Shown here: piece after piece, positions 1 through 20,900 of the stretch
Layout of the letters: each line of letters opens with the position of its first letter
Numbering within the stretch: the stretch's first letter is position 1
Source of the DNA: Iphione sp. A-MEVVRFRX5
Lineage: Eukaryota
Length of the DNA: 64,000 nucleotides
Reading direction: 5' to 3'
Assembly (NCBI GenBank): GCA_976226885.1
Contig: OZ320316.1
Coordinates: 80,352,001 to 80,416,000 of the forward strand
Notes under the pieces: generated by a model
What the model saw: the letters and a program-made list of their open reading frames with translations, nothing else
Databases searched by the model: none
What the model was told of the DNA's origin: nothing
Made by a program: the position numbers and the translations under genes

Positions 1-72
1 CCCGTCGTAAACGTGGTCACCACAGTTTGAGCAGTGGACCACCTTGCCTTCGCGCACGTCCCTTCCAGGGTC

Positions 73-562
73 ATGTCTCCAAACAGTGAACCACAGGGCA
101 GGCAAGCCCAGGTACCAAGGGATGGGACCCCTATACCCAAGACCGACCGTTTTCTCCCTGTCCTCGTCGAGGAAGGCTCTGTACAATCGGAGATCCCGCA
201 GACCACTCAACACCGAGACCGGAGCAAAAAACTGAGCATGCTACAACTATCTCAATTCTATTCGGTTCTTGTTGACAGGGGCGTCCAGTCGGCGCCCACA
301 AGAACACTGTTAGTGGCGCCGTCTAGAAACGTTACCGTCACTGAATGTTTGTCAGCACCGTTGTCACCAGCACCACACATCGATAACGCGACATCAGGCA
401 GGGGCTGTGTCACATCAAGGTCTGCCGCAGTTCCTCAGGTGACCTGCACTACCATTACCAGCCACGTGAACGCTAGGGATAACACAGGAAATGAGCGCCG
501 GCGCACCGTCAAGATCAAGGCGTTGTATCATCGACCTGTACGCAAAGGCTTTGGCAAGAAAG
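73..562 (+). CDS. Candidate first coding exon (TTLL10 alternative, or an exon of a separate upstream gene)
   Basis: In-frame TGA at 28-30, ATG at 73, 163 open codons, donor AAG|gtaacg in phase 1. GC-richer than the flanking sequence. Confidence 0.45.
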
Positions 563-1032
563 GTAACGTTTTCCCTCATTTCCGTATCAGTATCAGTAGC
601 GCATGCGTCTATTACGGTTTCTTAGTTCAAATGCTTAGACTTCCTTTATCCTACATTCTGAACCTACTCTATAGCATGTACATTCACTGTACTCATGTTT
701 ATGTCTATAATAGGATTTCTACTCCATATGCAATTCACGTACTAATCTTAAGACTATCGTTCGAAAACATTTTATTGGGTCAAGACTCGAGTTGATATGG
801 GCATTCGTCGTGGGAGAGGAGGTTTCTGTTTTTCAAATCAATAGGAAGTTCTGACAGGAGGGATAGATCTCGTCTCTTTTGCTACTTCCCTCTTCCTCCG
901 ACTAATCTATACTGTACCCCGCTCTCTTATTCCTGAGCTCCTGTTCTCTGTCTCCCTTCAGTCTTTTTCGGCCTCTGTTAGTGACTTCTGAGATCGAATG
1001 CCCGTACATCGTTAGGGTGTAGATGGGCGCAG

Positions 1033-1087
1033 TGCCTCTCTCTCTGTCTCTCTGTTTCTGCCTTTCTTTGTCTCTCTGTCTCTCTTT
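1033..1087. repeat. Imperfect (CT)n / TCTCTG microsatellite
   Basis: cctctctctctgtctctctgtttctgcc...tctctgtctctctttt. Confidence 0.8.
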
Positions 1088-2184
1088 TCACTGCATAGGT
1101 TTCTTCAAATCTGGGAATTACTGTTTCCCTGATCAATGCTTTGCTATTATTAAACATCGCGAATACACTAATACACTGTATTTGGAAAGATTGCAAAGGT
1201 CAGAATGAAGAGAGGAAGACATGTGAACGCCTTTGTTATACTTGAAGAATATATAACTTCATTGGTTGAGTTTTGCTGCACAGGTTATTTCGCTAGGCAC
1301 TATGGTATAAGATTAATTGATACAGAAAGAATAGCCTTTAGATAGAAGTATACTATTAAAATTCAATCAATATTAAATCAGTTGACCTTCACTCTGAAAG
1401 CAAGTGCACTGGCATTGAATGACTGTTGACATTTTGGAAAGGTTACATATTATTAATGTGTAATTGTGTTAACATATATATAATATAAATACAGTAGACT
1501 CACAAGTTAGTGTCAGACCAGAAAAGCAGCTGGCCGGAAATTCTGTGGAATCAAATTTTTCCTTCTAACATCTAATATTGAGGGATATCAGGATTGCAGT
1601 CGGATCACAAAACCAGCCACCTCACACTGTAGTTGCTTAGTTTTGGGAATGAAAACAACATATCGAATCAACGATACGGCCAGTTATAGAGTTTAGATCC
1701 CTAAATCACTGAACCAAAACTAAGCAAAGCCTCAGACTGCAGTCTGTCAGGATGCGCACATATCCTGGACTGGCCCTCAGCAACTCCAGCCAGCCACACA
1801 GACCATGACACCTCACTGAAACCAACCCCAGTTTTTTTATTAGTTTTATTCGATCTTATGTAACTTTAATCAAGCTTGCTGCCTACTAAGAGATAATTCA
1901 AATATGCCAATGTTTTGACAAGGACTGCTGTTTGAAAACTGTGGAATTTGAATATTATCAGGTATAGGCGGTCAAAGGTTTATTGCAGTCGATTTTGCTT
2001 GGAACAAAGCATGACTATGGGACTCTACTGCATACACACTTATATATATATATTATGTATTTAGATATATAAGCTCCGATTAAGAGAATTGAAAGACCAA
2101 CCCAAGCTTTTGTCTTAGTGGAGTTTTTTTTTATCTTTTTGCCCATTTGTGAATAACTTCAGGATAAATAATGCTTCAGACGTC

Positions 2185-2495
2185 GGCCTAAAAATTCTGT
2201 GTTTCGGTAACATGCTGAAAATCTAGAGGGTTGGTAGGTGGGTGATTTTTTTATCTATTTGTTCTCAATGTTAATGGATCCTGAAAGTAATAAATGTGTA
2301 TTGTAACAGCACCTCTGCTTCTTAGAGTTTAATGAAACTTATAACAAATGGAAACTAGTAACCTAAAGAGCACAATGGTGTATTATATATGCTTCTAGCA
2401 TTATTCGATCTGACGATATTCACAAAACAATAAACAAATTAAAACCCAGAACTGGCCACCATGTAGGATTAGCCAGGTCATCGGAAACACAGATA
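2185..2495. mobile_element. Probable related MITE remnant
   Basis: Starts ggcctaaaaattctgtgtttcgg; inverted ggaaacacaga near 2485; resembles the ends of the Harbinger-like family. Confidence 0.4.
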
Positions 2496-2709
2496 TAGTT
2501 CTGATAGACCTTATAGAATACACGATTTTGTTCCTTACATCTTTCACATGATACCATACAGCTTCATTGCAGTAGAAATGCTTTTACCATATATATGTGC
2601 TGCTCTCAATACCAATTAACATTAGCAGAAACACAGCTATTTAATTTAAGCCCGACCCAACTGCATTTAATTCTATTTAGTTATAGTCTTTGTGTGGAAG
2701 TTGTACTTG

Positions 2710-3054
2710 GGCCAAAAAATAGACGTGTTTCTGGTTACAACAAGCAAAGAACCTAGGTAGGGAGGGGGGATAGCTTTTTAAAAATAATTTTCCCACTTTT
2801 TTCCTCTGGTTTTCAATTATGATAAAGACAGTATGAAGAATTAGACCAATCTGTGTGAATTTTACAGGTTTTTGGTGAATTTTCATGGATTTTTTGCTTT
2901 TCTACTGAATTTATCAAAAACATGTGCCTGAAAACATGCATCTAAGGATATTCAGCCTTGGAAATTCTTTGGGGCCAAAAACGTTTTAGGTAGGGTGAGG
3001 TTTTACTAAGCAGGGGTGGGTTACCAGAAACACAATCATGTATTTTTTTATGCC
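2710..3054 (+). mobile_element. About 345-bp MITE (PIF/Harbinger-like), copy 1
   Basis: Begins ggccaaaaaatag..gtgtttctggt and ends ccagaaacacaat..tttttttatgcc; colinear with 55873-56200. Confidence 0.75.
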
Positions 3055-3575
3055 TAGGCAGTATGGAGCGTGCCTTGCTACAAATATAATAATATCCTAC
3101 ACAACACGGTAGCATAACCTATAGAACAGAGCATAGCCACCTCATATCCGTACAAATATATCCTGTCCATTTAAGAATGCGTATATATATGTGGTAGATA
3201 ATCCTTACTGTAAGGGAATATGATACAGTCATGACCGGAGTAGCAGTGACAAACAGAACACATTGTTAGGGCACAAAACTCTCGTGTGGGAGAGAGGAGA
3301 GAGTAGTAGGAAATTCAGACATTTACTTTCCCTCGGGCCTGTTGCCAGACCTCTAATGACTGTTTTTAAACATGTAATGAAATAATAGAAATGCATTTTG
3401 TTCCAAGAAATAGAATTCACGGTTAACCAGGTGAACCAATGCAAGTTCACATAATGTACATGAGGTCCCCTGACATCTTTAGCTCAGACATGGACGAATA
3501 CATGTCCTCCAAGTCTGTTCGTCTTGCCTAATTGTTATTTGTTAAACACTTACCAACTGGAGGTCTACTTGTCAG

Positions 3576-3631
3576 ACACTTCAGCGCCGATCGCAAAGGG
3601 CGCCAAGTACAAGCCAGAAGAACGTCGCTAA
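3576..3631 (+). CDS. Candidate short terminal exon (DTSAPIAKGAKYKPEERR*)
   Basis: Acceptor tacttgtcag|AC is phase 1 and compatible with the donor at 562; ends TAA TGA. Confidence 0.2.
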
Positions 3632-5254
3632 TGAGAATTTACATCCATTACTGATCCGCAGAGAATGAACCCTGAGGTAGAAAGACGACTTTTTTAATCA
3701 TACAGAAAGCCTTTCTTTCATGTTGAGCCTAGGCAAGACAAGCCAGGCCTGTAGTGAGTTTCTGGTTTGTTAATGTCCTTTAAACTAGACTCAGATTACA
3801 GAAGTACCATGGGCCAGCTGATGTGAAAAGATTTTAGATGCACACGGACTGGAATACAGCAGAGACATTATATATACAACAGAATTTATAAAGGAGTACT
3901 ACTCACATTTTGATTGACGAATGTCATAATTATGACTTTGATTCCAAGAAATGAAGTTACCAGCAGCACAGCTGATGACCAAAGCTATGATTTTTGATAG
4001 TGTTATTTTAAAAACAATCTGTAAGATAGGGTATTTGGAGATAAGAAACACGCATTCCGAAAAGAAACGTTTATATGCTGAAGGATTTAAGCAGGAGAAA
4101 CATGGACGATCTAAAGATCTTCTAACTGAAGCTAGGGTCACCAAAGAATCGCTCTCATGCGAAGGGTGCCGTCAAGAGTGATGAAGATATACCACCGTTA
4201 TGATTTAAGAATAAATCGAACTCTTCATAATGACAGCTACGTGCTACATAAAACGGAAATGTGTTTTATCATTCATTCATATCTATGTGGTATACCCTGT
4301 GGTGCACTTAGAGATTACATGAGTATGCCTTGTTTGTAGCTTTTTTTAATAATGTCAGTGTAGCTTCGAAATACTTATTCATCGATGTTTTTCGATCAGA
4401 AGGTAATATTGAGTGTCAGTCTTAGGGACAATGACAGAACATACTTCGGAACCTATAAATCATACGAAGGTATGCAGTATTTCTCGCGATCATGATATTG
4501 GTACACATTCTCCCCAGCCCCACCCCCGAAACGTTCAATAAGAACTTGTCCTACCAATTATAAACCTAAGAAGGCAATACACCCACCTGGTTTACAACAC
4601 GTCCACTATGAGTTTCTGTCCTTCCTACACTCCGCAGTGCTTGTATTTTGCTTATTCTCAATTTGCGTATAAAGGTTCAGGCTTTCACATGGAGCTATCT
4701 TCAGAGAACGTCAGTAGATAATGAAGTGCTGCAGTTTAGCCTCATATGATAACCACCATCGATTACATGCATGAGGTGATCATGAAGTCACCAGTGTCAA
4801 CTTACACCTGTGTTTTTTGAATAATTGATAATTGGTTCCGTGAAAGGACCAGGTTCATAACAGATTGCGATGATATACTTATCAGGTGATATGGCCTAAG
4901 CATGATCTATTATCAGAACATCTGTCTTCGTAGTGAAGGTCTATTCGTCTAGGCGAATTTTCCCGTTGCAGCTTTACCAAGATAAAAGGAAAAACTATTC
5001 CTGAGATGTGTTTTGGACAGTGCTTTGTACTTTGGATTGTATGCTCTGTGGCCGACACTGTTTAGCTAGTGACATTTAATCGTTCTTCATTCATTCCATA
5101 CATTAGGACACTTGTACAGTATAATTGCAGTTGCGGTTTGGGGTATTGGAGACCCAGAGCTTTCGCCGTTGCGGCAGGCCGAAGGACACCTGTTTGTACA
5201 TCCTTTTAAATTATAGTATTTAGAAACATAATTATGACCATCATTGTTGATAAA

Positions 5255-5425
5255 CAGTGGTCCCCCATTATCCGACCACCTCCTAACTGACAATGCTACG
5301 TATCCAACATAGTTTCCAGGAACCAAATTTTAAAAAATCAGTGGAAATGTTTCCTAATCTGACATAGCTCATATATTGAACAGTATCTTAAGGAACAAGA
5401 AATGTCAGATAAGGGGGGACTACTG
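5255..5425. mobile_element. 171-bp Tc1/mariner (Tigger-like) MITE
   Basis: Imperfect TIRs cagtggtcccccattatccgac / gtcagataaggggggactactg, followed by TA. Confidence 0.7.
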
Positions 5426-6797
5426 TATACCCCTATAGAGAAGCAAATCCTATACATGCATGCATAGTCAAATGATGATATATTCCCGGCAGCATTCCAA
5501 AGTATTATGTCAAATCATTCCAGCCCATAACATCCGTCAGGAAAATCTTTACATGTGAATTTTAAAAGCACACCGTCCTAAATATTTCAGTGATAGAAAA
5601 AGTGAAGCCACATTGACTTGTCTACTGTAGCGATGTCTACGGGGTACATGTACACGTATGTCTGTGCAAATGGACACAGACGTATAATGCTGCCACCTTA
5701 CGGTTTTTCTGGTATTGATAAAAATCACCGAATGGAACGGTTGAATCCTTCGTACAGGTGTACACACCTTATTGAACAGTGAGTCGATCATTATGCTGGA
5801 TTCCCTAGTTTCGTCTCAATTGAGTGACTTTCTTAGCAGCATGTGATATTTTCTCTTTTACAAGTTCATTCACGGAGGAAGATAATGACCTTAACACTGG
5901 GGCATCAGTTGTTGCACCCATGCCATTCCCTCGTTTGATGCAACTGGTACAAGGAAAGAGTAAATTACACTATCCATATTGTAAATGTATAAATTAGTGA
6001 TGTTTGAAGTTGTGCTGATGTTATTAACTTACCAATAGCCTGATTGTCTTTACATCTATAAATATACATGTATATATTCACTACAATATACAAAATTATC
6101 TCGGGGGTCTAGGTTGATAACTGCTGGTGGGTGAAATCAACATATCACTTATCTCAGACACGCATCCATGTGTGTGAACACTACTCGGGTTGGGTGTTTG
6201 TACATTATATGTCCTGGCTTTTCTCACATGTCATGGCCATGCATCTGAATGTGTGAATACATGTATTAGCTGAAGTCCGAGGGCCAGTGATTACAAGATA
6301 TAATGGATGAGGTGGTGATAGCCACCGAGTGCATTATAGAGGGTGAGCTGGTCCACGGACTTTAACTGATTTAAACCAACCCTACCAACAACTGTATGGT
6401 TTGCCAATCGAGTCAAGAGGATTAGGTCCACCAAGTCGGTAGACAAGGTGGCTATCATGCTGTCCTAAATGAACAATTTGTAGAGAGGACCACCACTGGA
6501 TCAGTTTAGAATATTTTTGTGTGATTTGGGATCAGTTTAGAAGGTTTTTGTGCAATTTGGGATCATGTAAACTATTATCTAATTTGTACATAATTTGCAT
6601 TAAAAAAACTCAGTTTACACAGATTCGGACAGAATTCTTTGAGATATTGGGAAAAGAGGCGGGGGGGGGGGGGTATGGGGGGTCTCCCCCCACATTAACA
6701 AATTTATTAGTATTTTTCAATAAAAAGTGAAACATCTAACAATAGTTCATCTTTAACCTTGCAATATCTGAATGAATGATAGTCTAGTCATTGTCCA

Positions 6798-6880
6798 GCC
6801 TCTGTGGAGCAGTGGATACGAGCACTGGATGTTGCATAGGCCATGTGAGAGACCCAGGTTCGAATCCCCCACCAAGCTTT
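6798..6880 (+). mobile_element. tRNA-derived SINE head (Pol III internal promoter)
   Basis: A-box-like TGGAGCAGTGG (6805-6815) and B-box GGTTCGAATCC (6857-6867) at tRNA-like spacing; no complete cloverleaf. Confidence 0.55.
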
Positions 6881-9800
6881 GACAGATTTCATCAGGCCAA
6901 AAGCAGAAAACACCCATGAGAAAAACATGACAGACTGTACAAATATACAATATAATGAACTTGGGGGGATGATAGGGACATAGAGAGAAACATGTGGCAG
7001 AGGTGGTTTAAGTTCATAGAAAGACTGCCTAATAGTGATTCCTTATTTCTTGTAATAGATCAAAGTCAAATATGTAAATAGAAGCAGATGATTTGTGATT
7101 CATTCGATAGCTCCAGGAGACGAAACAGATAGAGAGAGGAATAGGACAAATACAGAAGGATAGACACACATGTAGTTGCAGTTACTGAAATGTATGAAAA
7201 TATTTATACCTCCGCATATTCTGCGTTCATCCCATACAGCCGCAAGGTCGTTAATTTTTAGGTATAATACTCTGTAGTTCTAGTGTCTATTCAGATAAAT
7301 TAATATGCCAAAATGTGTATCACACTTTTATTTCATATGCATGTAACTAGAGAAATGTATACATGAGCTTGGGTAGAGAAATAGGTCAACTGATTTTCGC
7401 TACTTCAAAGTCTCAAGAAAAATATTTAACATTAAGATATACATATGTACATGAACTGTAGATTTAACGCCTTTAATCCCAGCAGGCGCACCAAGTGCTT
7501 ACAGGAATTAATAAATGAAGAAGTAGACTGGGGAGACTAGGTTCCCCGCCAAACCACAATCCTAAAACACTACCAATATGATAATACATCAGCAAAAAAG
7601 AAATGCACAAAAATAAGATCCTTTGTGCGTGTGAAATTGGAACACTTTGCAAATCTCTCCCGTAACATATGAATACCACATTCTGCAAATTTGGACTGTT
7701 GCAAGTGCATTCCTATAAATTCCTGCACAGTAACTGATATCAGATAGACCCCATTGAATTATTGACCTAAGAGTTATTAGAACTAGAGTACTTGGACAGA
7801 AACTCCAAGGATCATAGCAGTAGGAGAGCTGTGCTATTCCTAGGTCCCCCCGTGGCTGGGGTACAATTTCAAAACTCTTATTTATGTAATATTACTGATC
7901 TTAGAATTCCTTGAGGTTTTGCCTCCAAGACTACAAGCATGCAGTTCATTCAATAATACTGTGTTGGTCGAATGCATTCTCCTCGCCGAGATTGAATCTA
8001 GTAATAGAACACCTACCCGACATCTTCCGTCAAGAGAGGTCTGACACATGAATGTACGGCCAGATTAGTTACCGATATCAATGTATGGTCTACCTGCCGG
8101 GCACACTGACCCGCAATTCAACTGCTATGCCTGTGGTGAAAATTGAACCAGCAAAAATCTTGGAGCATTATCTGCGCTTCGCAACAGGGCGCTTTGGCAA
8201 AGAATCCATTTGCAAGACTTCATGGCCGAAAGGTCCGAACACTCCATGGAACCGGACGTAAAAGGGATTAGTATTGGAAACAATTATGAATGTCCTTTCC
8301 AATCGAAAGGACACGGTTAACATGCAATATGCGGCCTGCAGTAGTGGCGAAGCCGGCACTTGTTTGCTCTCCAGAGAACCCATAGATGAAGCTAGTTACC
8401 TGAGTGTGTTCGGTTTGTACGGGACAGGGGTTGAACGGGGTGGTGCTGGTGGCGGTGAGCCCACTTCCTAGGTAAGTGAGTGGAAAGAGAGTCCCGTTTT
8501 TGCATGAGGATTGAGCAGAGGGGCGGTGTCACATCGAGGGTGTTAGATCCCTTGAAGCCCAAACTCAAGAAATGGCTGAAGCGACAGGCAAAGCCTCCGA
8601 TTGTAATGCACCAGAAGGTGCTGTGCAACACTGCCGATTTTTGACATCCACATTAACATTTCAACAAACGGTAAGTGACATAGCCTGTCAATATTGAGAG
8701 GAGGAAAATGTGTACACCTCAATCGTGAGCGTTTAGCGTTTAGCATTTTTAAGTGCATAACTTAATGGATCTGTCCTCAACTTTACTTGATCGGAAATAA
8801 CTATTGATGAAGCAATTTATTGACTTCAGGGTATTTTATATGAATGTCTATTGTAGTCTTTTGTATCGATAGCGATATGCTTCAAGTGGCAGTTTCAGTC
8901 AACCTGCACATACTGTTCCATGGCCCGATTTTAGACTTAATAAATAACGTCACTCTGCCTTGATATTAAATTTGTATACATGCCATGCTAATTGAAGTAA
9001 TTTTGATTTCACTATATCAAAGCCAGTGCGCACAGTTCCACCAATATATATTTGCAACTTGTGATTGAACAAGGATGGTAACAAGTGGCAATTCTATTTC
9101 TACGGCAAGAAAAGGCTATGCGATTGTGTTTCAACAGCCAGGCGTGAAATGTGACTGTTGGCTACGTTAAACTGTTGGTCCCCATGTATAGGGTGATTAA
9201 CAAGGGCAAGAAAGTACGGTTATTTTTGTATGATGTAGAATACCTCCTAGCCATCAACAAATTACAATTTCTCTTAGCATAATCTTCATGCGATATATAT
9301 ATGTATATATATCCAGCTGACAACAAGTTCTGTAGTGCTGACACCCGACAAGTGTACCGTCACTATACTGGAGATATTGTTTTACAAACAATGTGGAATT
9401 GCTATCAAATACCACGACAGGTGTATTTGGTTTCTCTAGGTGAGAACTGCTTAAGTAAACCTCGCTGATTCTTCCTGCTAGGTTAAGCACGCACGTGTAC
9501 AGGTTGATGGGTTCTACCACATACATTGCATACATATCTACGTCCAGCTATACACTCACACTAGTCTAGCTTGAATAGTTTTATTGACAAGCTTGGTCCT
9601 GTCTTATGTAATCAACGAGAGAGTTGGTAGCTTGGTCCATGAAACTTTATATTAAATACAGAGGTAAATATTCCCAGTGTTTGCACTACTTGTATGTCTT
9701 TATCGCGCATATAGTAGGTGCACTTAGATAATCACTGCACGGATTAGTCTGCCGGCTCATGCTCTGAACTCTCCACAGTGGTTAGAGCCCATTGGAAAAC

Positions 9801-10485
9801 AAGTGTTGTCAAGCGTGAAAAGGTTCCGATTAGTTTTTGAAACACTGGTTTTATAGTAGGTAGGCCGACTCGCACTACTAGCTTCAAACAACATATCCAT
9901 AAAGTCACACAGACAAGAGAGAGACTACTTAACTGAGATGAAAGATTTGAGAAAGCCAGAGACATTGTTGTAATTGTATGCATGTATATATATAGTCAAA
10001 GGGACTGTGTCACAACTGCATTGATATTATGGAGCATTATATTTCAAACGATGATAAACACGCTTTACATCAATAGCTACGCATTTGAAACAATTTTGTC
10101 AGGTAAATACCTTTAGATGGATGAGGGCCACTCCAATTTCCTACATATTCTCTTCTCTTAGTGATTTACAGCTCATCGATATGATTTACTGAGTGAAGTT
10201 GCTGATAAGATTTGGAGGGTTAATATTATATGTTTCGGGTTTTATTCAATTTATAACTGACTACAAGTTTAACCGCCTCCTGCCTCTTGCCTCACTAATG
10301 TTTAGCTCCAGTACTTCACAAACCTACGTGCTGATATAGACGTAGTAAAGTAAGCCCGCCTGCGGTAAGCACTTCCTTCTTTCACCAGGAAATCAGCCTG
10401 GACCAATAATCTCGCAACTTTCCCATTATTTATTGATACACTGCTCGCGAGTTGCTCCGAACCAAAACACACGGGTAAGCCACCG

Positions 10486-10499
10486 GTCACCATAGCAGC
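10486..10499. promoter_or_regulatory. Candidate RFX X-box
   Basis: GTCACCATAGCAGC is one mismatch from GTHNYYATRRNAAC, about 280 bp upstream of the candidate ATG at 10778. Ciliary genes are commonly RFX targets. Confidence 0.3.
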
Positions 10500-10777
10500 G
10501 CCGGAGCTAGTTCAGACGGCTCATGCCTGTTAGAGGAGGTTGGTATACACACTAGCTACCGCATCCCTACTTCATCTTCCTGCTTCATCGGCTACGAGCA
10601 CCTCGCGACCTGTGAACCTAATCAACAGGTAGCTTCCCTGCACCGGCTCACAGAAGCACTTGTTACTTATTATCAGTGCATGAGCAGACCGTAGCGGACA
10701 GTTTTTAGCCTGGACTGGCCTCCCTTCACACCCGTCAGGTGAACGCTTGTGGTTTGGGTTCGTCCTGCCTGGCATGA

Positions 10778-10907
10778 ATGTCTCACAAAACAGTGGATAT
10801 CGCCGGGGGGCTCAAGAACTATGTGTTCTTGAACCCATTTGCCTCCGATATGCTGCCGCTCCGCAGTGCCATCAACTTCGACTATGTGGACAGCAGCGAC
10901 GATGACA
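10778..10907 (+). CDS. Candidate alternative first exon (MSHKTVDIAGGLKNYVFLNPFASDMLPLRSAINFDYVDSSDDD)
   Basis: TGA immediately before ATG, 43 open codons with protein-like composition, consensus donor ACA|gtgagt in phase 1. Confidence 0.45.
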
Positions 10908-12859
10908 GTGAGTAGGACAGGAATATTTTCAATCGTTTACCCTTTTCCATTTTTAACGGAGAAGTGCATTCAGCGAACAGACCGCATTTTCTTTCCCTTG
11001 AAAAGACACCTTGCTGGACTAATGTCGTTGTTCTGGAAAAGGTGCACGAAAACTAGAGACGGCCAACCACACGTAAATTCCTCTCGATTAACGTATACAT
11101 GCATCACGTTTTCCGATTGTACACAGGATACTTGCGCTTTTTTGCCAAGACTTTCCATTCTAAAGTTGCATTGCTTGCATCTTGCCTCTTTTGCCTGCAC
11201 TGTTGCATGTTTTCCTCTCCATCGGCACTGCCGGTAGTTTACCGGAGACATTTACGATGGCATCGTCGGCCCCTCACCTGCAGAGCAGCATCAGTCTGGA
11301 ACCGACCAAACTCTTGTGTAATATGGCCGGGTCAGTAACAATCAACAAAGTCTATATGTATAGATACTGCAGATAAATGCTTCCAAGTGCATGAAATAGA
11401 TGGGTACTTTGTTCGTACCGCATGCAAAACACACATTCAATCACCACTGATAGATACACTGCCACTAGCTGAATTACCACAGCCGCATTTATACATGATT
11501 CATGCACAAGGGTTCTGATTGGGGATTGTTTTGGCACAAGTACCAATCGGGCGGGAGACATGATTCCAATTTGCAAACTCTTAATTAATGAATAATTGAA
11601 GTTGAAATTGAAGCTCAGTAATTCTTAAGAATGTTCTATATCACGTAGCATTATGGACCTTTGAATGTAAATAACGTAAATATACATGCCTTGAATATTT
11701 TACTTGTCTATGGTATGTCAGTATTGAAGATGATATTTATTAGAACCTTCGCTTCAGCTCCCCTAAAGACGCGCTGACAGTATGAAGAAGCCACCCCTAA
11801 GCCAGAACTTTTTGCAAAATATTTTGTCCACATTTGAAGTTATTGTTGGGAACTTGAATTGATTTGAGTATCGATGTTGTGCTCTGCACGTGTATTGATC
11901 ACCCTGTAGCCAATAATTCTCCACAACAAAAACAGAGTAGCTTGTCTGCAGTCGATGTCAAATGGGGCACATGAAGCTCCACTATACTCACATAAATGTT
12001 TCTAAGACAACTAGTCATATACATGCTAATGGAACATTTCGTTTTCTCTGGAAGTATTTTATGAAATGCACATTGTTTGTCCATGTACATTGCTGTTTTC
12101 AATAGACTTTACGCTGTCATGTCCTCCTTTTGGGGACCGAATTTACTGTTGATATCAGATAACTTTGAAAGATTACACATAAACATCAACCACACAATCA
12201 CATTATCTGTACTGGAGATATGCCTGCTACCAGCACAAAGAGCAGATGTCTATCCTTCCGTTTTACGAAAGCGAGAGCATACCTTTGACGAATCAACAGT
12301 AGTGCACCCATAGTTCGACAAGGACAATAACGGAGAATAAGGGATGGTACAACCATGACTACAAAGTTGTCCACCGATAGAAATAGTGAGAACATATAAC
12401 ACTCTGCAAATTGTGTAGCTGTCGCAGCTAGGGGACGACCTACAGGAAGATAGAACCAAGATTCAGTGGCTTTATGTGGCTCATATGACACGCTAGATTG
12501 GTGATATCCCTTATGCAATCCAACTCAAATTTCAATACAACAATTACTGTCCAAAGGTTCCTATTTCATTTAGACATACAAAGGAAGATTAGTCACCAGC
12601 AGTTGCTATCGATATATCCTGGCGGACAGCCTGTAACTTAATACCACTCTCATAGGTGCTAGTATAGGCAAGTATAGGAGCTGCCATGTACAGATTTGAA
12701 TGTTTGTGGTGTCATATCAGGGTGGTTGGAACCATTGTCAGGTGACAGTATGGAAACTGGTTACTTTGTGAGGCAATGTTGACAGTTCCATTGTGATGTC
12801 ATGTTCTGCATTTAGGTAGGTGAACCATGTATATTTTCCAGTTTCTTTTTCACTGGGGA

Positions 12860-14830
12860 AGAGATTTCGTTCATGGTTTCGACCAAGGGTATCCTCAGGT
12901 GCCATCAAATATCTCCTTTTACTGAGGAATTTTTCATGGTGTCAGGCAGGGTAGCCAATCTTTTGGCTAGGTTCATATGTGGGGAGCTGGTGTCCCTCTG
13001 TGCCCGCTGCCTGGCCTATCAGGGTGATTGGGTCCACGATTACTCCAGTACTGCCTTGGTTTGGTACTGGGTTTAGTTCTTGTCATAATCATCTACTCAG
13101 TGGTTAGCACTGTCGGTGCACTACCTGACTTTACCGGACCGTGACTATACGGGTTGGGTATGTGGATGTATAGGTAAATCTTTGTGGACGGGCTATATCC
13201 CACATCCCCACCAGTGCTTTGTTATGGCCTTGTTAAAACTGTTGTGCATCCATCACATTTAGCCCCAGTGGTGCCATAGTATGTAGGTGCTGGATCCAGT
13301 TCATTTCAAATGAGCTTTTTTTGTACTTCACACCCTCTGGGTGAATGTTGACGAAATCCACAATGTGGATCTCTACGTCTGATATCCCTTGGTGGGATTT
13401 TGTGTTGAAGTGTTCACTGATGGTTCAGCCTCACTGGTTTCTACTGATGATCCTAAAGTGGCCCAGGAACTGGTCCTTTAGGTGATTCGTTGTCTGGCTT
13501 ACATATTTTATGCCGTATCTGGTGCACATCATACAATAGATAAGGTTGCTGCTTTACAGCTTAACTTTACTTTTGCACTCTACTTGCGATGCTCATATGA
13601 GCATTCTATTTGTCCTGAAAGGTTTAGTTTGGGGCAACATCTGCACTCCTTAGTTTTGCAGATATTCAGTGGATCATCCCAATTGTCACTGGCATTGCTT
13701 TCCAGTAGTTGTGCTAGTCTTGCACAGACTAGTAGGTCTCTGAGGTTTTTGGGCCTTTGAAACACTGACAAGTACCCACACTGATGGATCTCTTTCGTAG
13801 TGCAGGATCTTCCCAGAAGATGCCAGTTTGTCTACCAGGGACTGCTGTAAGCCATTGAAAGAGGGATTGAAGGCTGTGACTGCAATTGGTTTGCCCTCCC
13901 TACCCCCTGAATTTTTGTTTCCAATAGGCCATCCCTAGTTTGGCTTGATACTCATTTGTAGAGTCTGACCACTGATGCTGGGGGGGTAGCCTTTTCCTAC
14001 TAGCTTTTGGCCTGTTTCCACATTGGCTTCTCAGAAGTCCAAATTGTGTGTGCATATCCTTCAGACTCATACGAATTGTCTATACAGTATGCCTTGTTTG
14101 CAATGCGCCAAGTGCCTTGAGCTATAATGTAGATAGCTCGGAGTGTCAATGGGTTTGCGGTACACCCTCCAACTTAGTTTACCCCGTTGTCAATGTTGAC
14201 CAGGGTGTCTAAGAAAGAAATTTCTGTAGGTGACTTCTTGGGTGAATTTGATTGACTCATTGCATGCATTTGCATGTTGGAGGAACTGTGTCAGTTCCTC
14301 AGTGCCATGTTGCCACAGCATAAAATCACCATTGATAAAGCATAGCCACAGTAGTGGTTGTTTTGCATTTTTGAGGATTTGGGTTTCTGCTGGGTCAGTC
14401 ATGAAGAGATTGGCATAGGATGGTGTCACTCTCGTTCCAGCCCCGTAGCCAAGAAGTTTTGTGAGGGTATCGGACAGTACCCCCAATACCCCAGGGGTGG
14501 AACTCTTGATGACCATCTCTATGCAAGTCTGTATGTAGAAACCTTTGTTGGGGGGGGGAGATCGGACGATACCCCCGATACCCCATTGGCTACGGGTCTG
14601 CGTTGCCATTTCTAGGACCATTTTCAGAAGTTGACACAAGGTCAGGTTTATCAGGTCTTCAGTGGGATGGGGTCTGTATTTCAACAGGGTTCTGGGTTCG
14701 TGGTTTATAGGGAACTAACATCCAAACTGCATAGTAGGCAGCCCTTTGGTACCTTGTTGAAGAAATCTGTCGTTTTTAACATAGGATTTCGAGACCAATG
14801 GGTTAAGGAAAATATCAACCAAGGCTGATA
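12860..14830 (-). mobile_element. Decayed, 5'-truncated Penelope-like retroelement (RT plus GIY-YIG endonuclease)
   Basis: Minus-strand remnants with stops and frameshifts: PKGCLLCSLDVSSL* (RT motif A), GTRVTPSYANLFM, LLWLCFINGDFMLWQHGTEELTQFL..IKFT, ISFLDTLV, YRKPIDTPSYLHYSS, FQRPKNLRDLLV, YVGQT..LKDQFLGH..ISEHFN (GIY-YIG region). Confidence 0.85.
14438..14600 (+). mobile_element. 163-bp MITE (hAT-like CAG-starting TIRs) nested in the Penelope RT
   Basis: Ends cagccccgtagccaa ... ttggctacgggtctg; internally similar to the 26811-26973 copy in opposite orientation. Confidence 0.8.
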
Positions 14831-15791
14831 TCTTTTCTGCTGGGCCTCCATTGGACGAAACTATCGGTCTGCCTGGAAAAAAAGTCAGCGTTTATTCAAA
14901 GATTAGTGTATTTGTCAGCGGATAAATCTCATTCTACAGACCTGTGTGAAAAGAAATACATGTATGTAACTTTTAAATCTCAGTATCAAATCCCATCCTT
15001 GTTGCTTTCATGGCAGCAAACCAATTGTGTAGCGTTTCCGAGGAACAGAGATTTTTGCAAGTTGCTCATTACAATCCAATTTTCGGATCCACAGGCTTTC
15101 CGTATTATTAAATACATATAGTCGTCCCTCTGATAGCTCAATCCAGGTTATTCTAATGCAACCTAGATTATATATCTATGCCGATGAATACATACATATA
15201 TCCATAAAGACATCAAAGCTGCTCAAGGTTCTCTTGGTTATAACACTGAATGTCAACATTTCAATAACCTTTCGTCAGTGCACCTTTGACATGGATTAAC
15301 CAAAGCTAGAGCACATTAGGGCCCATTAGCGACGCTCCTACACAATACAACAACCTTCAACGTGGCTGCAACGTGTGCTCTAAACAAAAAGTATCTACAA
15401 CCCTTTGATATTATCTCTATTTCTTTGATAGTTTTCCAAGGGGACACTCCACCACAAATACCTATTTCAGTTTGATGAATGTTTTTCATCCCGATGGAGT
15501 TTATATATGGGATATTGCCCATAGTCACATAAAGCCCAAAATAAACTTAGGTTGGCTCATGTCCTCTCAGGCCAAATGGACTGACTTATGATTTATAAGC
15601 TGGGATCTTATCCCGGCCACAATACCTTAGGCTTGTTCCAACTCAGAGCGGTTTTATACGTGAGAGGGCCAAGGTATAGAGCTCACCAGTGGTGCTCGCC
15701 TGTGCTGCCTGGGGCACCCTTTGTTTGCCTGTCGCCAGCGTTGATTTACACGACATGTGACGATCTCCCATGTGGAGTCAATGCTGGTTGA

Positions 15792-16314
15792 ATGTTCTCG
15801 CTGGTGTACGCTTTGGTCGGCCAAACGGCTATTGAAAGAAGACTCAATAGACACAACTGCCTGCCCGCCCTTCCTGCTACTTCACATGGGAGATACTTGG
15901 CAAGAGACAAACCTGGGTTCGAGGCGGGATGGGAGGTCGAATCTCCGGTCCGACGCCAACCATTCTGGACCGACTGGGTCGCCTTCCCAGTCGACGCGAC
16001 CCGCCTCGTCCGCGCCTCCACGGCGGCGGGGGACGGTAGTGGCGGCGATGACTGTAGGGCCGGACGCTCCCCCTCCAGGAGGAATCTCCTCCCAGGGAAG
16101 GGTATGTCCACCAAGCATGTCTCTGTCTCAAATCAAACACTTCCTACACGGATGGCCATGGAATGTCTACGCTATCAAGACCTCTATGGGCCGGTCGCGG
16201 CGGATCCGAAATCAAACCTGCACAAACGAAGCCGCCCACGCCTCATCACCGACAACACCCTTCCGGTTATCAGTGTTACCGGAACCTCACTCCCCCTGCA
16301 CCTCACCATGTCAA
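15792..16314 (+). CDS. Candidate alternative first exon (174 codons)
   Basis: TGA then ATG at 15792, GC-rich open frame, phase-1 donor CAA|gtaggt (alternative phase-1 donor after 16365). Confidence 0.45.
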
Positions 16315-17640
16315 GTAGGTACGCCTTTTCCTGGGCAACGTTGGGAAGGCGCAGAGGCAGGCAAGGTCTTAAAATAGGAAGTTCCCATGGGAGTCTGTTA
16401 GTGCTGAAGGCTCTCGTTGTTGGAGCTGTCTCGTTATGTACAGCATCCAAGACAGGCAATGGGATATCACATATCATACACAATTTTACATACTTCCATA
16501 TCTACTTTGATGTTTAGATGTATAGGAAAATTGACACAAGTGTTTCTGTTTTGAGCACAAAACCCGAAATGCCTACAATTATTGTCTCCGAAAAAGTCTG
16601 AAACGTTCCTTTTCTTTTTTCTCTATCAAATGAAGAGAAGGCGCAATGTAGAACTTCTTTTGCTGAGGACCTTTCGAACAATGCGTAGGTATTTGTGTAG
16701 TTAGACTCACAATGTACAGAACATTTGGAATTCCAAAACATCTGTCTAAATTTACTGAATATACATTTATAATTAAACCTATATTTGCAGCATATGATAT
16801 ATATAGTGCATATACAAAAATAAGCTCCTTGTACAGTGTTTCGTTTTGTGTACTAGTTTAGTCGAACTGTCCAGTGTTACTTAGATTATAGTGCAAGTAT
16901 GCTTTTGGCAGTAGAAAAGGTTATAGTAGTGAGATAAGTCTGACAGTATATGAATTGAGTGACCTCTTATAGAGTTTGTCTTGTTAGGTACTTCAGAATA
17001 CTACCAGTATACTCGTAGTTTGCCAAGTTGTTTATCACCGGGTCATCGGTCTAGGCTCTTATTATGCTTGTTGATAACCATTTACTTCCCAGTCTTCTAG
17101 TTAACTGCTCCTTCCTCTGTTTACAAAAGACAACTACATGCGAAATAAAAAAATCTATCCAAACATTAGTACGATAGCAGTTTCTCTAGTAGTATTATAG
17201 GCAGTTCACTTCACCCTCGGTAAGGCGTGCCATTTTTTCATCCTGTGTATCTAAGTAGAAGCATACCCAAAACAAACTACTTCCATCTGCATAACTGCCG
17301 GTAAGTTCCTTTTCTGGTCCATTCACATTTAGTTTTTGTCACTGAGCTTTCAAATGCCAGACAGTGAGAGACCTGAAGTATGGCTACAACTGCAAGTATT
17401 CGGTTCAATCGAATGGAATTCCACCAAGTGATTTCACTAGCCTCACAAAAATCGCCTTTGCCGCAAATATATGGTCGCAAATATTAGGGTGTGAACCAGC
17501 AGCAATATCGATCATTTTCTGGTTCTACCCATCGGGTAAGGTGTCGACGGGCGCCATGGTAAGGAAGAGAAAAAAGTTTCAGCGAATACCTACTACGTTA
17601 TTAATTACAGGCTCGGGGGAAAAAGAGATTGCATGTTCGC

Positions 17641-17971
17641 ATGCAGTATGAAAACCCTTACGGTTCGGTGAGGATGAAGGCGCGGCCTTCCTTACAAAGA
17701 ATCAGTCCCGTCCGCCAGCAGACTGAAGAGGCTTTGGATAGCCCGGCCAACGAAACTGAGGTAGAGCCAGCCCGCGAGGTCACGCCCCTGAACAAGCGGC
17801 TAGCCGCATCGCCAAGGGAGGCTGGGATGGTGGTGACCGAATCAAAAGCCACGGCCCTACCTCCAATAGCCACCAAAAGTAGTCGGCCCAGCACCACGAC
17901 CGCCAACAAGACCTCTTCTGCCCCAACGGGCAAAGTTGCCATAGGGACTGTGAAGGCCACAATAAAGTCAG
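17641..17971 (+). CDS. TTLL10: Candidate first exon of TTLL10 ([16 protein letters not shown]...; may extend to acceptor 17611)
   Basis: In-frame TAA at 17602-17604; acceptor ttaattacag|17611; Ser/Thr/Pro/Ala-rich open frame; phase-1 donor CAG|gtacct. Confidence 0.6.
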
Positions 17972-20900
17972 GTACCTCGCAAGGCCTACACCTCGGATAA
18001 CTTGGACACTAACACAGGCTTCGAAATGCCTAACAACACTAACAGTGAGTGCCTTCAAATCGGCAAAGACAAATTCCATTTTGCAGCATAATTATTACTG
18101 AGGCTCCAAACTAAATTTCAGTTGCATACATAAGATGTTTTTTTACAAAATGTTTTGATAGCCTTTAAAATGTTTTACTAAGCGTCGTTTTGGAAGCCTA
18201 TTTTTCATGTTTTCTGTTATTTTTTACACCCAAGCACCTCTAATTTTCCTAATATTTAATATGTATTATTTTTAACATAAAGTGCACCGGAACTGGGATC
18301 TACGTTTTTAACATGAGGCGCAGCAGATCTTATTCTCTTTTTATTCTTTTTTTATATTAAATTAATTTGGCCTACTCCTATACCCAGTGCGATTGCTTGT
18401 TGAATAAGATTAACAAAGATCCTTCGGGCGAATCAGCTTGTAGGCAGATCTCCAGAACCAAACCGCTATGTCCGTTGCCTAAACATTCTGACGACATCTA
18501 GGAAGAAGTATGATTAAGATTGGAATTTGGCAAGAAACGCTACCGACGCAGGTGCACTGGCTGTAGCGAGGAGAGGCAAACACCTGCTGCCAACAGGTAC
18601 TCTTAAAATCAATCCTCTGCGGACGTAACACGATCTAAAGAGTTTAAGTGTGAACAGGAAGGAGAGTCCTTAGCCGACCGTGCTACTCCCGGACATCTTT
18701 ACCATGCACCACAGGTGTATGTAAGAGCAATAGGTCAACGCCATTGAGATTCGAGGGAGAGAATATCGTGCGTTTATGGAATGCAGTAGAATGGCCGCCG
18801 AAAAGAAGTACCACCACCATCTTATTACCAAAGCAACGACATTCAGATAATTATACCTTCCAGCAGCCGATGTGTTACACATTCGACGGAGGAAATTCCC
18901 TTTGATTGAAAGTACCTACAGAGGAACTGTGCAGACTTTATCTCCAGGCACTGTTTATCTCCAGGCTACCCATGTCAGTGGGGAGGTGGCTGAGTGCTAC
19001 AATCAGTTCCTGGCCAGATGAATGGCCGTATGAATAAGTAGGAAGGACAGGACATGTTTGAAATCTTCTCTGGGATGGAGTCGTTTGGCTTACCCGCATC
19101 GACTGCCGAGTCGGTGAAAACGCCGCTGCATCGTTCGCTGAGAGCCCACCGACGACAGCTTGTGCGGGACCTCAACTGGCTAAGCTACTGTCAGAAGTAC
19201 AGTATGCATAATCAAGCAGGAGTCTCTCTACAACGTTTCTATCAGTGCATTGCGAAACAAATGATCCCAGGTAGATATTTACTTTACGGTGTAATCTGTA
19301 TTGAAATCATCTCCTCCGCGCACATTGCCTTCTACCTAGTTGCATTGCCTTTTCCGGTGAGCAGAAGTATATTTTGTGGGTACCTGATCAGAGATAGGTT
19401 CAGATCAATCGTACGTTAGTTGTGATGAGTACAAAGGCAAAAGAAGCGTTGAAGTGGTATCAAAGACAGGATCCATCCAAGACAGCCTTTATTCCTGTTT
19501 CCTGCTACTCCCGTCTACTAGCCGAACGCATGCTGGTCTTTGAACAAGCATAACAAATCATATACACGTACATTGTACATTTCCAAGTATTACATACAAT
19601 CATGTATAGCATTCCCGTCTCAGGACTTCGACACCGGCATTCACTTCAGATTTTACACAATGATTGTGTCATAAGATGAGATTAAGAGTGGTAGATTAGA
19701 TCTAACAGTTAACCAATCGACGTGTTTTAGAATTAAGTTTCTAACAACTGCGCCTGTATTGCTTTCAGATAATTGAATAGATACTCATAAAATCAATCAC
19801 ATGAAAAGACCGAACTAAATTTATTTTAGAAAATATACTTTCCTGTGTTTGCCAAATATTTAATGTCTAGTAAAACTTCTGTTTGAAGCTTTCAATTCAT
19901 GACTCTTAGTTCGTATTACATCAATGCAATCACCATTCCGAAGTTAAATACATGTATTCCGCTAATATCGCTATGGATAATGATCATATACCAATGTGCA
20001 GCTTTATATTCATATCGATTAAGAAATATACCTCGATGTAATCATATATGAGGCTGCTCAATACCCTGTGCATTTCCTAAGCTCTTATTACTCTTGCAGG
20101 TGAAAATGATGTCATTGGGGGAAGCCGATATCACAGAGTTAAGCGCGACAAGAACATACCGGAAGACCTGCAGTACCGGCCGAAAGTATCGCTTCCTTCT
20201 AATAAAGAACCCACCTTCTTTATTGGCGGTTGTAATGGAGTTCAGCTGTGAGTATACATAGAGCAACTGGCGAATTTTGAATTTCCTTATATTACCCGGT
20301 ATTGTTTTTCTCTTTATGTTTAGGACACACCGTACATGTATAACAATGCTTTGAAAACCTTGATGTTCATTTTGTCATCGCTCGTCTCGGGAGATCCCTT
20401 GCCCGTATCGTTAGGATAGAGTTAACTTTGTCAATATGGGTTACATTTTCATATGCACGTATATGGTTATAACTGTTTTATTTCACTTTCGTTGCGTTGT
20501 CCTGTTCAATTACAGAATGTATCATGCTACTGGTACTAGTGCTTTGTTTCACACTCATTCCATTGCCACGTTCAATTGCAGAATATGTGATGCGTTGGAG
20601 GCTCTGGGATGGAGACGGTCCAAAGATAAATTGGACGAAAACTTTAAGCTTAAGTGGACAGAATTAAAAAGTCATATAAATTATGCCTCTTTCCGCGAGG
20701 GCGAGCAACTTGTCAACCATATACCTAATTGTCAATTGCTCACCAACAAAGTTGGCCTACTTAGTAGTCTGCAAGAATATGAACGCCTTACCACACAAAT
20801 GAATCCTAAGGCGAAACGCCCCAAACTACGATTAAATGACTTCTTCCCAGAAACATATCGGCTGGACGACCCAAAGGAGCGTGAACAGTTTTACCAGCAA

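What the first reader, a model, noticed from the sequence alone, without database searches (positions are those of the whole stretch)
73..20247. Array of up to five unrelated candidate alternative first exons, all in phase 1, upstream of one constant TTLL10 glycylase body
Seen: five segments (73-562, 10778-10907, 15792-16314, 17641-17971, 19054-19270) each have an upstream in-frame stop, an ATG, a 43-174 codon open frame and a GT donor one base into a codon. That is the phase required by the first common exon at 20100. I found no convincing phase-1 acceptors that would chain 17641-17971 or 19054-19270 in series. Inference: mutually exclusive promoters give one tubulin-glycylation enzyme several different N-termini (a variable-first-exon design like protocadherin or UGT1 loci), possibly tuning localisation or substrate by ciliated tissue. 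Caveats: phase 1 occurs by chance about a third of the time, I selected these candidates by eye, and 73-562 may belong to another gene.
Basis: partly seen in the sequence, partly recalled or inferred. Interest (0 to 1): 0.75.

Follow-up and report, generated by a model that had tools for sequence, protein, structure and literature searches.

The report
Conserved alternative N-terminal exons of TTLL10
All five flagged segments upstream of this tubulin-glycylating enzyme gene are real coding exons conserved in related species, but they form at most four alternative protein starts, not five, and no RNA data could be found to show how they are joined.

Summary
The mechanical observation holds, but the criteria alone do not discriminate. 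In 1-20099, 20 of 32 plus-strand and 28 of 39 minus-strand ATG-ORFs also have a phase-1 GT.

The stronger evidence is comparative. I found the orthologous locus in a related species, where synonymous sites are saturated and introns cannot be aligned, and part of it in a third species. The only collinear conserved blocks upstream of exon 20100 are the five flagged segments plus one new 49-nt exon.

- **73-562, 10778-10907 and 19075-19270:** Each has a conserved ATG and a conserved phase-1 donor.
- **17641-17971:** an internal exon. Its conserved acceptor is at 17611, in phase 0.
- **15792-16314:** the donor is right, but the supported reading frame is the other one, so the donor is in phase 0. 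It feeds 17611, so candidates 3 and 4 act in series.
- **New exon 16636-16684:** it has the same entry and exit phases as 17611-17971.

My best reading is up to four alternative 5' modules joining the ATG-less exon 20100. The joins are inferred from phase alone, because no RNA run was listed. This is a new member of a known kind, alternative 5' exons, and of moderate interest.

The parts
69..562 (+). The ATG is at 73, a possible acceptor (cccttccag|) ends at 68, and the donor AAAG|GTAAC follows 562 in phase 1.
   Evidence: The relative has the same MSPN start, a polypyrimidine tract plus CAG 1 nt before its ATG, and the same donor. The exon is 490 nt here and 709 nt there, both 1 mod 3. In frame 1, pN is 0.27 and pS 0.63 with no stops; the other frames have stops. 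The probability of staying open by chance is 0.001 and 0.0001.
10778..10907 (+). Exon C2 (candidate 2). It gives 43 codons from an ATG that directly follows a TGA. The donor ACA|GTGAGTA is in phase 1, and the exon carries an NPF motif and an acidic tail.
   Evidence: It is conserved in three species, at 86% and 72% amino-acid identity. pN is 0.09 and pS 0.60 in its own frame only. The donor heptamer is invariant in all three. The 5' end of the exon is unknown; acceptor-like sites lie 39 and 42 nt upstream in two species and are absent in the third.
15886..16314 (+). Exon A (overlaps candidate 3 but is read in another frame). The ATG is at 15886, the conserved core starts at ATG 16117, and the donor CAA|GTAGGTAC follows 16314 in phase 0.
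   Evidence: Block 16117-16204 has pN 0.18-0.27 against pS 0.57-0.70 in frame 1 for all three species pairs, whereas in candidate 3's frame pN is about equal to pS. The donor 11-mer is invariant in three species. Lengths from ATG to donor are 429, 408 and 435 nt, all 0 mod 3. The probability of staying open by chance is 0.012, 0.023 and 0.0013.
16636..16684 (+). Exon B (new, not in the finding). It is 49 nt long, with an acceptor aag| in phase 0 and a donor TGC|GTAGGT in phase 1.
   Evidence: At 84% nucleotide identity it is the best-conserved block upstream of exon 20100. Its length is 49, 49 and 52 nt in three species, so the frame is kept across a 3-nt indel. pN is 0.16 and pS 0.35.
17611..17971 (+). 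Exon C4 (candidate 4, extended 30 nt upstream). The acceptor attacag| is in phase 0 and the donor TCAG|GTACC is in phase 1. The middle is disordered and rich in S, P, K and T.
   Evidence: The acceptor and the first 18 codons are conserved in three species, with synonymous changes upstream of the ATG at 17641. A 12-mer at the donor is conserved in the relative. The exon is 361 nt here and 451 nt there, both 1 mod 3 and open throughout. The probability of staying open by chance is 0.012 and 0.003.
18007..18044 (+). Intronic cluster of three CTAAC/ACTAAC motifs, 36-73 nt downstream of the C4 donor.
   Evidence: It is conserved in the relative although the rest of the intron cannot be aligned. 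Reading it as a splicing-regulator site is inference.
19075..19270 (+). Exon C5 (candidate 5). Coding starts at the conserved ATG 19075, and the donor after 19270 is in phase 1.
   Evidence: Amino-acid identity is 66-68% over 65 codons in its own frame, with pN 0.22 and pS 0.80; the other frames have stops or pN above pS. Conservation begins at the ATG, and in-frame stops lie 36 and 12 nt upstream. The only in-frame AG sites score -9 and -11, against 3-19 for the real acceptors.
20100..20247 (+). Exon Ea, the first exon of the TTLL10 core. It has a strong acceptor in phase 1, no ATG, and a donor in phase 2.
   Evidence: Amino-acid identity to the relative is 90%, with pS 0.89. Its end aligns with annotated TTLL10 proteins. 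The acceptor is in phase 1 in both species.
20582..28815 (+). The rest of the TTLL10 body. Exons lie at about 20582-20907, 23085-23241, 24666-24840, 26637-26777, 27175-27309, 27611-27709 and 27955-28815 (stop).
   Evidence: tblastn with annotated TTLL10 proteins gives about 60% identity over all exons. phmmer gives 352 homologues. All exons are conserved in the relative.

Best explanation
The 20 kb upstream of the first TTL-core exon of a TTLL10-type tubulin polyglycylase gene holds six conserved coding exons. They form up to four alternative 5' modules. Each module brings its own start codon and ends one base into a codon, which is the phase the ATG-less exon at 20100 needs.

The modules are:
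- **C1:** 73-562.
- **C2:** 10778-10907.
- **Exon A plus B or C4:** exon A (15886-16314) followed by either the 49-nt exon B (16636-16684) or the 361-nt exon C4 (17611-17971).
- **C5:** 19075-19270.

Alternative transcription starts and splicing would then give one catalytic body several unrelated N-termini, most of them disordered. These probably set where or when the enzyme acts on axonemal tubulin.

Shown: the exons, their frames, their splice-site motifs and their conservation. Inferred: that they join exon 20100, that they have separate promoters, and what they do.
For: - **Conserved blocks.** Against an orthologous 39-kb stretch of a relative with pS 0.8-1.0 in the core exons and unalignable introns, the only collinear conserved blocks upstream of 20100 are the five flagged segments plus exon B. 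A third species carries C2, A, B and the start of C4 in the same order.
- **Coding signature.** pN is well below pS only in the stated frames. Length differences of 219, 21 and 90 nt are all multiples of 3. Chance openness is 0.0001-0.02 for C1, A and C4.
- **Splice sites.** All six donors, and the acceptors of B, C4 and Ea, are conserved at the same positions and phases.
- **Reading paths.** C1-Ea, C2-Ea, A-C4-Ea, A-B-Ea and C5-Ea are open through the next exon in both species. A-Ea and A-B-C4-Ea hit stops.
- **Need for an upstream exon.** Ea has no ATG and has an in-frame stop just upstream, so some upstream phase-1 exon is required.
- **C2 and C5 as start exons.** Both have in-frame stops directly before conserved ATGs and no usable in-frame acceptor.
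- **Precedent.** Annotated Mytilus TTLL10 has a long and a short form that differ only at the N-terminus.
Against: - No transcript evidence of any kind. No RNA run was listed for this DNA, and no protein from this species or a close relative is on record.
- Phase matching has a one-in-three chance per exon.
- None of the modules resembles the N-terminus of any of about 250 TTLL10 homologues, so nothing ties them to TTLL10 except position, strand and phase.
- C1 has an acceptor just before its ATG and may belong to a unit that starts outside the window.
- If unspliced, C2 would be a 45-47-aa open frame that stops 2-3 codons past the donor in all three species.
- If unspliced, C4 would stop 9-14 codons past its donor.
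Confidence: 0.55

Rival explanations
1. Only C5 is the 5' coding exon of TTLL10. C1, C2 and A/B/C4 belong to one or more separate small genes lying upstream on the same strand. Examples would be a disordered protein made from A plus C4 that ends at the stop at 18000, a 45-aa peptide from C2, and C1 as part of a gene that starts left of the window.
For: C5 is the nearest module, is well conserved, and begins at a conserved ATG. Read-through of C4 and C2 reaches a stop within 2-14 codons in every species seen. The modules show no similarity to any TTLL10 N-terminus. C1 has its own acceptor.
Against: Conservation stops exactly at the GT of each donor, and the donor motifs are invariant even at synonymous positions. 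Read-through tails are not conserved. C1's tail is 77 codons here against 2 in the relative. The relative has no AATAAA or ATTAAA in the 1.5 kb after C4. No other conserved exon exists that these donors could join, and Ea is the only conserved phase-1 acceptor.
Confidence: 0.25
2. There is one long transcript with all upstream exons in series as a multi-exon 5' leader. The protein starts at 19075, and the upstream conserved frames are translated upstream ORFs that regulate it.
For: All the exons are collinear on one strand. A-B-C4 in series ends at a stop that overlaps or closely follows the ATG at 17641. Acceptor-like sites exist 91-110 nt upstream of the C5 ATG in both species.
Against: Upstream ORFs of 120-240 codons kept open across 90-219-nt indels are not typical of leaders. 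C2 and C5 have no conserved acceptor. All terminal donors sit in phase 1, which a non-coding leader has no reason to keep in both species.
Confidence: 0.1
3. The array is: five parallel, mutually exclusive first exons at the given coordinates and frames, each spliced directly to 20100.
For: All five satisfy the ATG, stop and phase-1 criteria. In block 16237-16314 candidate 3's frame cannot be excluded, and it is open in three species.
Against: Codons upstream of ATG 17641 are under coding constraint in three species and start at a conserved phase-0 acceptor. Block 16117-16204 is coding in the other frame.
Confidence: 0.05
4. The five segments are chance open frames picked by eye in GC-rich patches.
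Against: The segments coincide with the only conserved blocks in 20 kb, and those blocks carry frame-specific purifying selection.
Confidence: 0.01

Closest known systems
Genes whose isoforms carry unique N-terminal regions encoded by alternative 5' exons with separate promoters, such as the mammalian PDE4 genes (own knowledge)
   Same: Unrelated ATG-bearing 5' exons lie in front of one shared catalytic body. All end in the phase the first shared exon needs. The N-termini are plausible targeting or regulatory labels.
   Different: Here the joins and promoters are inferred only. One module has two exons with an either-or choice (B or C4). The enzyme is a tubulin glycylase.
Variable-first-exon clusters: protocadherin alpha/gamma and UGT1A (own knowledge)
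   Same: Several 5' exons, one constant acceptor, and a one-of-many choice.
   Different: In those clusters the variable exons are tandem paralogues that encode a folded domain. Here the modules share no similarity, have no Pfam family, and number at most four.
Annotated TTLL10 isoforms of other invertebrates: a short form in Mytilus californianus (P0161) and a long form in M. trossulus (P0165), and long forms with an N-terminal NlpC/P60 domain in gastropods, a nemertean, an annelid and echinoderms
   Same: The TTL core is the same, and variable N-terminal extensions end just before the conserved PTF[FY]IGG exon.
   Different: No module here resembles those N-termini. No NlpC/P60 exon was found in the window or within 10.8 kb upstream of C1 in the relative.
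Frame-enforced mutually exclusive exon pairs (own knowledge)
   Same: B and C4 share entry phase 0 and exit phase 1. Their lengths are not multiples of 3, and including both or neither breaks the frame.
   Different: Classical pairs are duplicated, similar exons of similar size. B (49 nt) and C4 (361 nt) are unrelated. B could instead be a frame-breaking regulatory exon.

Membership tests
TTLL10 (TTL-family tubulin polyglycylase) | TTL / ATP-grasp catalytic domain | tested here: met
   Eight exons between 20100 and 28815 align to annotated TTLL10 proteins at about 60% identity. All listed homologues carry PF03133, nearly all together with PF14398. ORFs of the relative hit PF03133. The single-exon Pfam hit in the window is weak (E 0.043).
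TTLL10 (TTL-family tubulin polyglycylase) | Closest to TTLL10 rather than to other TTLL paralogues | tested here: met
   Most of the best named hits are labelled polyglycylase TTLL10 in molluscs, a brachiopod, amphioxus and vertebrates; a few carry other TTLL labels. The nearest solved TTLL (5vlq) is only marginal. I built no tree.
TTLL10 (TTL-family tubulin polyglycylase) | Glycine-chain elongation on tubulin tails (PMC12340829) | not testable with these tools
   This needs an enzyme assay.
Variable-first-exon cluster (protocadherin / UGT1A type) | Several ATG-bearing 5' exons whose donors match the phase of one constant acceptor | tested here: met
   C1, C2, C4 (through A) and C5 all end in phase 1, and Ea accepts in phase 1, in both species.
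Variable-first-exon cluster (protocadherin / UGT1A type) | The variable exons are tandem paralogues | tested here: not met
   All-against-all BLASTP of the modules from two species gave a best E-value of 0.1, on low-complexity matches only.
Variable-first-exon cluster (protocadherin / UGT1A type) | Each variable exon has its own promoter and is spliced directly to the constant exon | not testable with these tools
   No RNA run was listed. For candidates 3 and 4 the conserved phase-0 donor and acceptor argue for serial use.
Alternative 5' exon / alternative promoter gene | Two or more conserved 5' coding exons that cannot be read in series | tested here: met
   C2 and C5 have in-frame stops directly before conserved ATGs and no usable in-frame acceptor. 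Serial joins made from the ATG positions hit stops.
Alternative 5' exon / alternative promoter gene | Observed transcripts with different first exons | not testable with these tools
   None was listed. Read laying could not be used without a run.
Mutually exclusive exon pair | Same entry and exit phase, with the frame broken by both or neither | tested here: met
   B is 49, 49 and 52 nt and C4 is 361 and 451 nt, both going from phase 0 to phase 1. A-Ea and A-B-C4-Ea hit stops in both species.
Mutually exclusive exon pair | The two exons are never included together in RNA | not testable with these tools
   No RNA data.

The most novel reading that the evidence does not exclude
A tubulin glycylase carries a conserved set of interchangeable N-terminal address labels. 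There would be four unrelated start modules, one of them with a frame-enforced either-or exon pair (B or C4) next to a conserved ACUAAC cluster. Module C2 would be a 43-residue, 86%-conserved peptide with an NPF motif and an acidic tail that could recruit the enzyme through EH-domain proteins of the ciliary membrane-trafficking machinery. Exon A might also be read in two frames, because its second frame is open in three species and holds an invariant GCCATGG.
Probability: 0.25. Interest if true: 0.65.

Novelty: new member of a known kind. Interest (0 to 1): 0.45.

Why it matters
How glycylases are directed to particular axonemes and cell types is poorly understood, and the catalytic core alone does not explain it. 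If one TTLL10 gene offers several conserved, unrelated N-termini, each becomes a testable targeting or regulatory handle, for example sperm flagellum versus epithelial cilia. The 43-residue C2 peptide is short enough to test directly.

For annotation, the locus shows that gene finders working from protein homology would miss all of these 5' exons, because none resembles a known TTLL10 N-terminus. Alternative 5' exons as such are common, so this is not a new principle.

Tried and rejected
- **RNA evidence.** The look-up of sequencing runs listed no run for 20100-20951, so read laying could not be used.
- **The species' own protein.** A profile of orthologues plus the window's exons found 745 TTLL10 proteins, none above 62% identity to the window apart from one ORF fragment of the relative. 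A search with the second core exon found only that relative.
- **N-termini of distant orthologues.** tblastn of 250 proteins gave nothing upstream of 20177. Two-sequence HMMs of each module against them gave nothing below E 0.05.
- **Metagenome scan.** The scan with the C2 alignment gave 53 pattern matches but no relative.
- **NlpC/P60 domain.** The domain seen in long TTLL10 forms was not found in the window or in 10.8 kb upstream of C1 in the relative.
- **Serial join of C1 or C2 into exon A.** A ttggcaag| site is in phase 1 in two species, but it has a weak polypyrimidine tract and is absent in the third species. I set this aside.
- **C5 as an in-frame internal exon.** The only in-frame AG sites score far below the median of all AG sites. 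I rejected this.
- **Dual-frame reading of exon A.** Periodicity and pN/pS cannot separate frames 1 and 3 in 16237-16314. This stays open.
- **Retrotransposon remnant.** My impression that ORF 14190-14684 (minus strand) is one got no Pfam support.
- **Literature.** I found no report of TTLL10 alternative first exons.


Full report
**1. The observation**

All five segments have an ATG, an in-frame stop upstream, an open frame of 43-174 codons and a GT one base into a codon. Exon 20100-20247 reads as TTLL10 only when entered in phase 1. In that frame it ends with the [10 protein letters not shown] motif. It has no ATG in that frame and has an in-frame stop at 20078.

In 1-20099, 20 of 32 plus-strand ATG-ORFs of at least 43 codons contain a phase-1 GT, and 28 of 39 on the minus strand do. 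The five donors score like the two known donors of the gene on a rough matrix, in the top 5% or so of all GT sites. The flagged places do coincide with patches rich in GC and CpG.

**2. The gene**

A phmmer search with exon 20583-20906 found 352 homologues. Annotated TTLL10 proteins of molluscs, a brachiopod and others align to eight exons between 20100 and 28815 at about 60% identity.

- The organism is not identified. Its nearest annotated TTLL10 proteins are from lophotrochozoans.
- No protein of this species or of a close relative is on record.
- TTLL10 elongates glycine chains on tubulin tails (PMC12340829).

**3. Related genomes**

One ORF fragment at 92% identity led to a 3-Mb ENA contig of a related species. 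I walked 39 kb of it upstream, later 48 kb (L001-L004). In the core exons synonymous sites are saturated (pS 0.8-1.0) and introns do not align. Anything that aligns is therefore under constraint.

A search with the C2 open frame found a third species as a 5.5-kb genomic Logan contig (L005).

**4. What is conserved upstream of 20100**

The only collinear blocks are listed below.

| Block (window coordinates) | Exon |
|---|---|
| 224-375 and 504-567 | C1 |
| 10770-10914 | C2 |
| 16117-16327 | A |
| 16633-16693 | B (new) |
| 17579-17684, plus 18002-18044 in the intron | C4 |
| 19073-19262 | C5 |

**5. Exon by exon**

*C1 (73-562)*
- The MSPN start and the AAAG|GTAAC donor are conserved.
- The exon is 490 nt here and 709 nt in the relative, both 1 mod 3.
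- In frame 1, pN is 0.27 and pS 0.63.
- Both species have a polypyrimidine tract and CAG 1-4 nt before the ATG, in the same phase. C1 may therefore follow an exon left of the window.

*C2 (10778-10907)*
- It gives 43 codons, with pN 0.09 and pS 0.60.
- A TGA lies directly before the ATG, and the donor ACA|GTGAGTA is invariant, in all three species.

*Exon A*
- In 16117-16204 only frame 1 behaves as coding.
- The donor after 16314 is invariant in three species and lies in phase 0.
- Each species has an ATG 66-77 codons upstream of the conserved MSL core. Lengths from ATG to donor are 429, 408 and 435 nt.

*Exon B (16636-16684)*
- It is 49, 49 and 52 nt long and goes from phase 0 to phase 1.
- It evolves as coding sequence.

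*C4*
- A conserved acceptor at 17610/17611 opens the exon in phase 0.
- The ten codons before ATG 17641 show synonymous change in three species, for example three different Arg codons at one position.
- The donor 12-mer is conserved.
- The exon is 361 nt here and 451 nt in the relative, both open throughout.

*C5 (19075-19270)*
- Amino-acid identity is 66-68% (65-codon exon vs 63-aa tblastx HSP), with pN 0.22 and pS 0.80.
- Conservation starts at the ATG, and stops lie 36 and 12 nt upstream.
- The donor is conserved in phase 1.
- The only in-frame AG sites score -9 and -11, against 3-19 for the real acceptors.

Chance openness for C1, A and C4 is 0.0001-0.02 in each species.

**6. Connectivity (inferred)**

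- In both species the paths C1-Ea, C2-Ea, A-C4-Ea, A-B-Ea and C5-Ea stay open through the next exon. A-Ea and A-B-C4-Ea run into stops.
- Ea is the only conserved phase-1 acceptor. B and C4 are the only conserved phase-0 acceptors after A.
- Candidates 3 and 4 therefore act in series, and B and C4 look like an either-or pair. B could instead be a frame-breaking regulatory exon.
- C2 and C5 cannot be read through from upstream.
- This leaves at most four alternative starts.

**7. Limits**

No RNA run was listed, so no junction or promoter has been seen. None of the modules resembles any known TTLL10 N-terminus or any Pfam family. Their link to TTLL10 rests on strand, order, phase and the lack of any other conserved partner exon.

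The main rival is that only C5 serves TTLL10 and the other exons belong to separate small upstream genes.
- For it: read-through of C2 and C4 reaches stops within a few codons.
- Against it: conservation ends exactly at each donor, the read-through tails are not conserved, and the relative has no polyadenylation signal after C4.

**8. Comparison and verdict**

The design works like genes with unique N-terminal regions made from alternative 5' exons. It is not a protocadherin/UGT1-type cluster, because the modules are unrelated to each other. Other invertebrate TTLL10 genes are annotated with long and short N-termini, so variable N-termini in this family are not new.

It is smaller than claimed, with four modules rather than five, one frame wrong and two candidates in series. 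Its central claim, splicing into 20100, remains untested.

Noticed in passing
window 23685-23735 (+): A 51-nt cassette-like exon lies inside the TTL core between the exons ending at 23241 and starting at 24666. Its acceptor is ttacag|, its donor is CAGAG|gtaac, and it goes from phase 2 to phase 2. It is 80% identical in nucleotides and matches 16 of 17 residues in the relative. It is absent from all 250 TTLL10 homologues, and it repeats the [IV]IQR ending of the preceding exon.
   Followed up: partly
window 18007-18044 (+): Three CTAAC/ACTAAC motifs lie 36-73 nt downstream of the C4 donor and are conserved in the relative inside an otherwise unalignable intron. They look like binding sites for STAR-family splicing regulators or like branch points (own knowledge).
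   Followed up: partly
It contains an invariant GCCATGG. In 16237-16314 the two frames cannot be told apart by pN/pS or by periodicity.
   Followed up: partly
proteins P0003, P0007, P0012, P0017, P0194, P0204: Long TTLL10 forms of gastropods, a nemertean, an annelid and echinoderms carry an N-terminal NlpC/P60 domain. This is either a widespread fusion or a recurrent merging of neighbouring genes in annotation. It was not found here.
   Followed up: partly
proteins P0154/P0172 and P0157/P0175: The clams Mercenaria and Ruditapes each have two TTLL10-like paralogues, 61-63% identical, on one contig: a short form and a form of more than 1300 residues.
   Followed up: no
window 8587-8688 (+): There is a weak translated match to the relative (38% over 34 residues, 37.7 bits) between C1 and C2. 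blastn does not recover it.
   Followed up: no
window 14190-14684 (-) and L002 2149-3537 (-): A 164-codon minus-strand ORF lies in the intron. It reminded me of a retroelement, but it has no Pfam hit. The relative has a non-orthologous RVT_1 ORF in its corresponding intron.
   Followed up: partly
window 27955-28815 (+): The last TTLL10 exon ends in a low-complexity tail of about 250 residues rich in S, A, G and T. GC content is 57-65% with CpG observed/expected above 1.1, and the tail is only loosely conserved in the relative.
   Followed up: no
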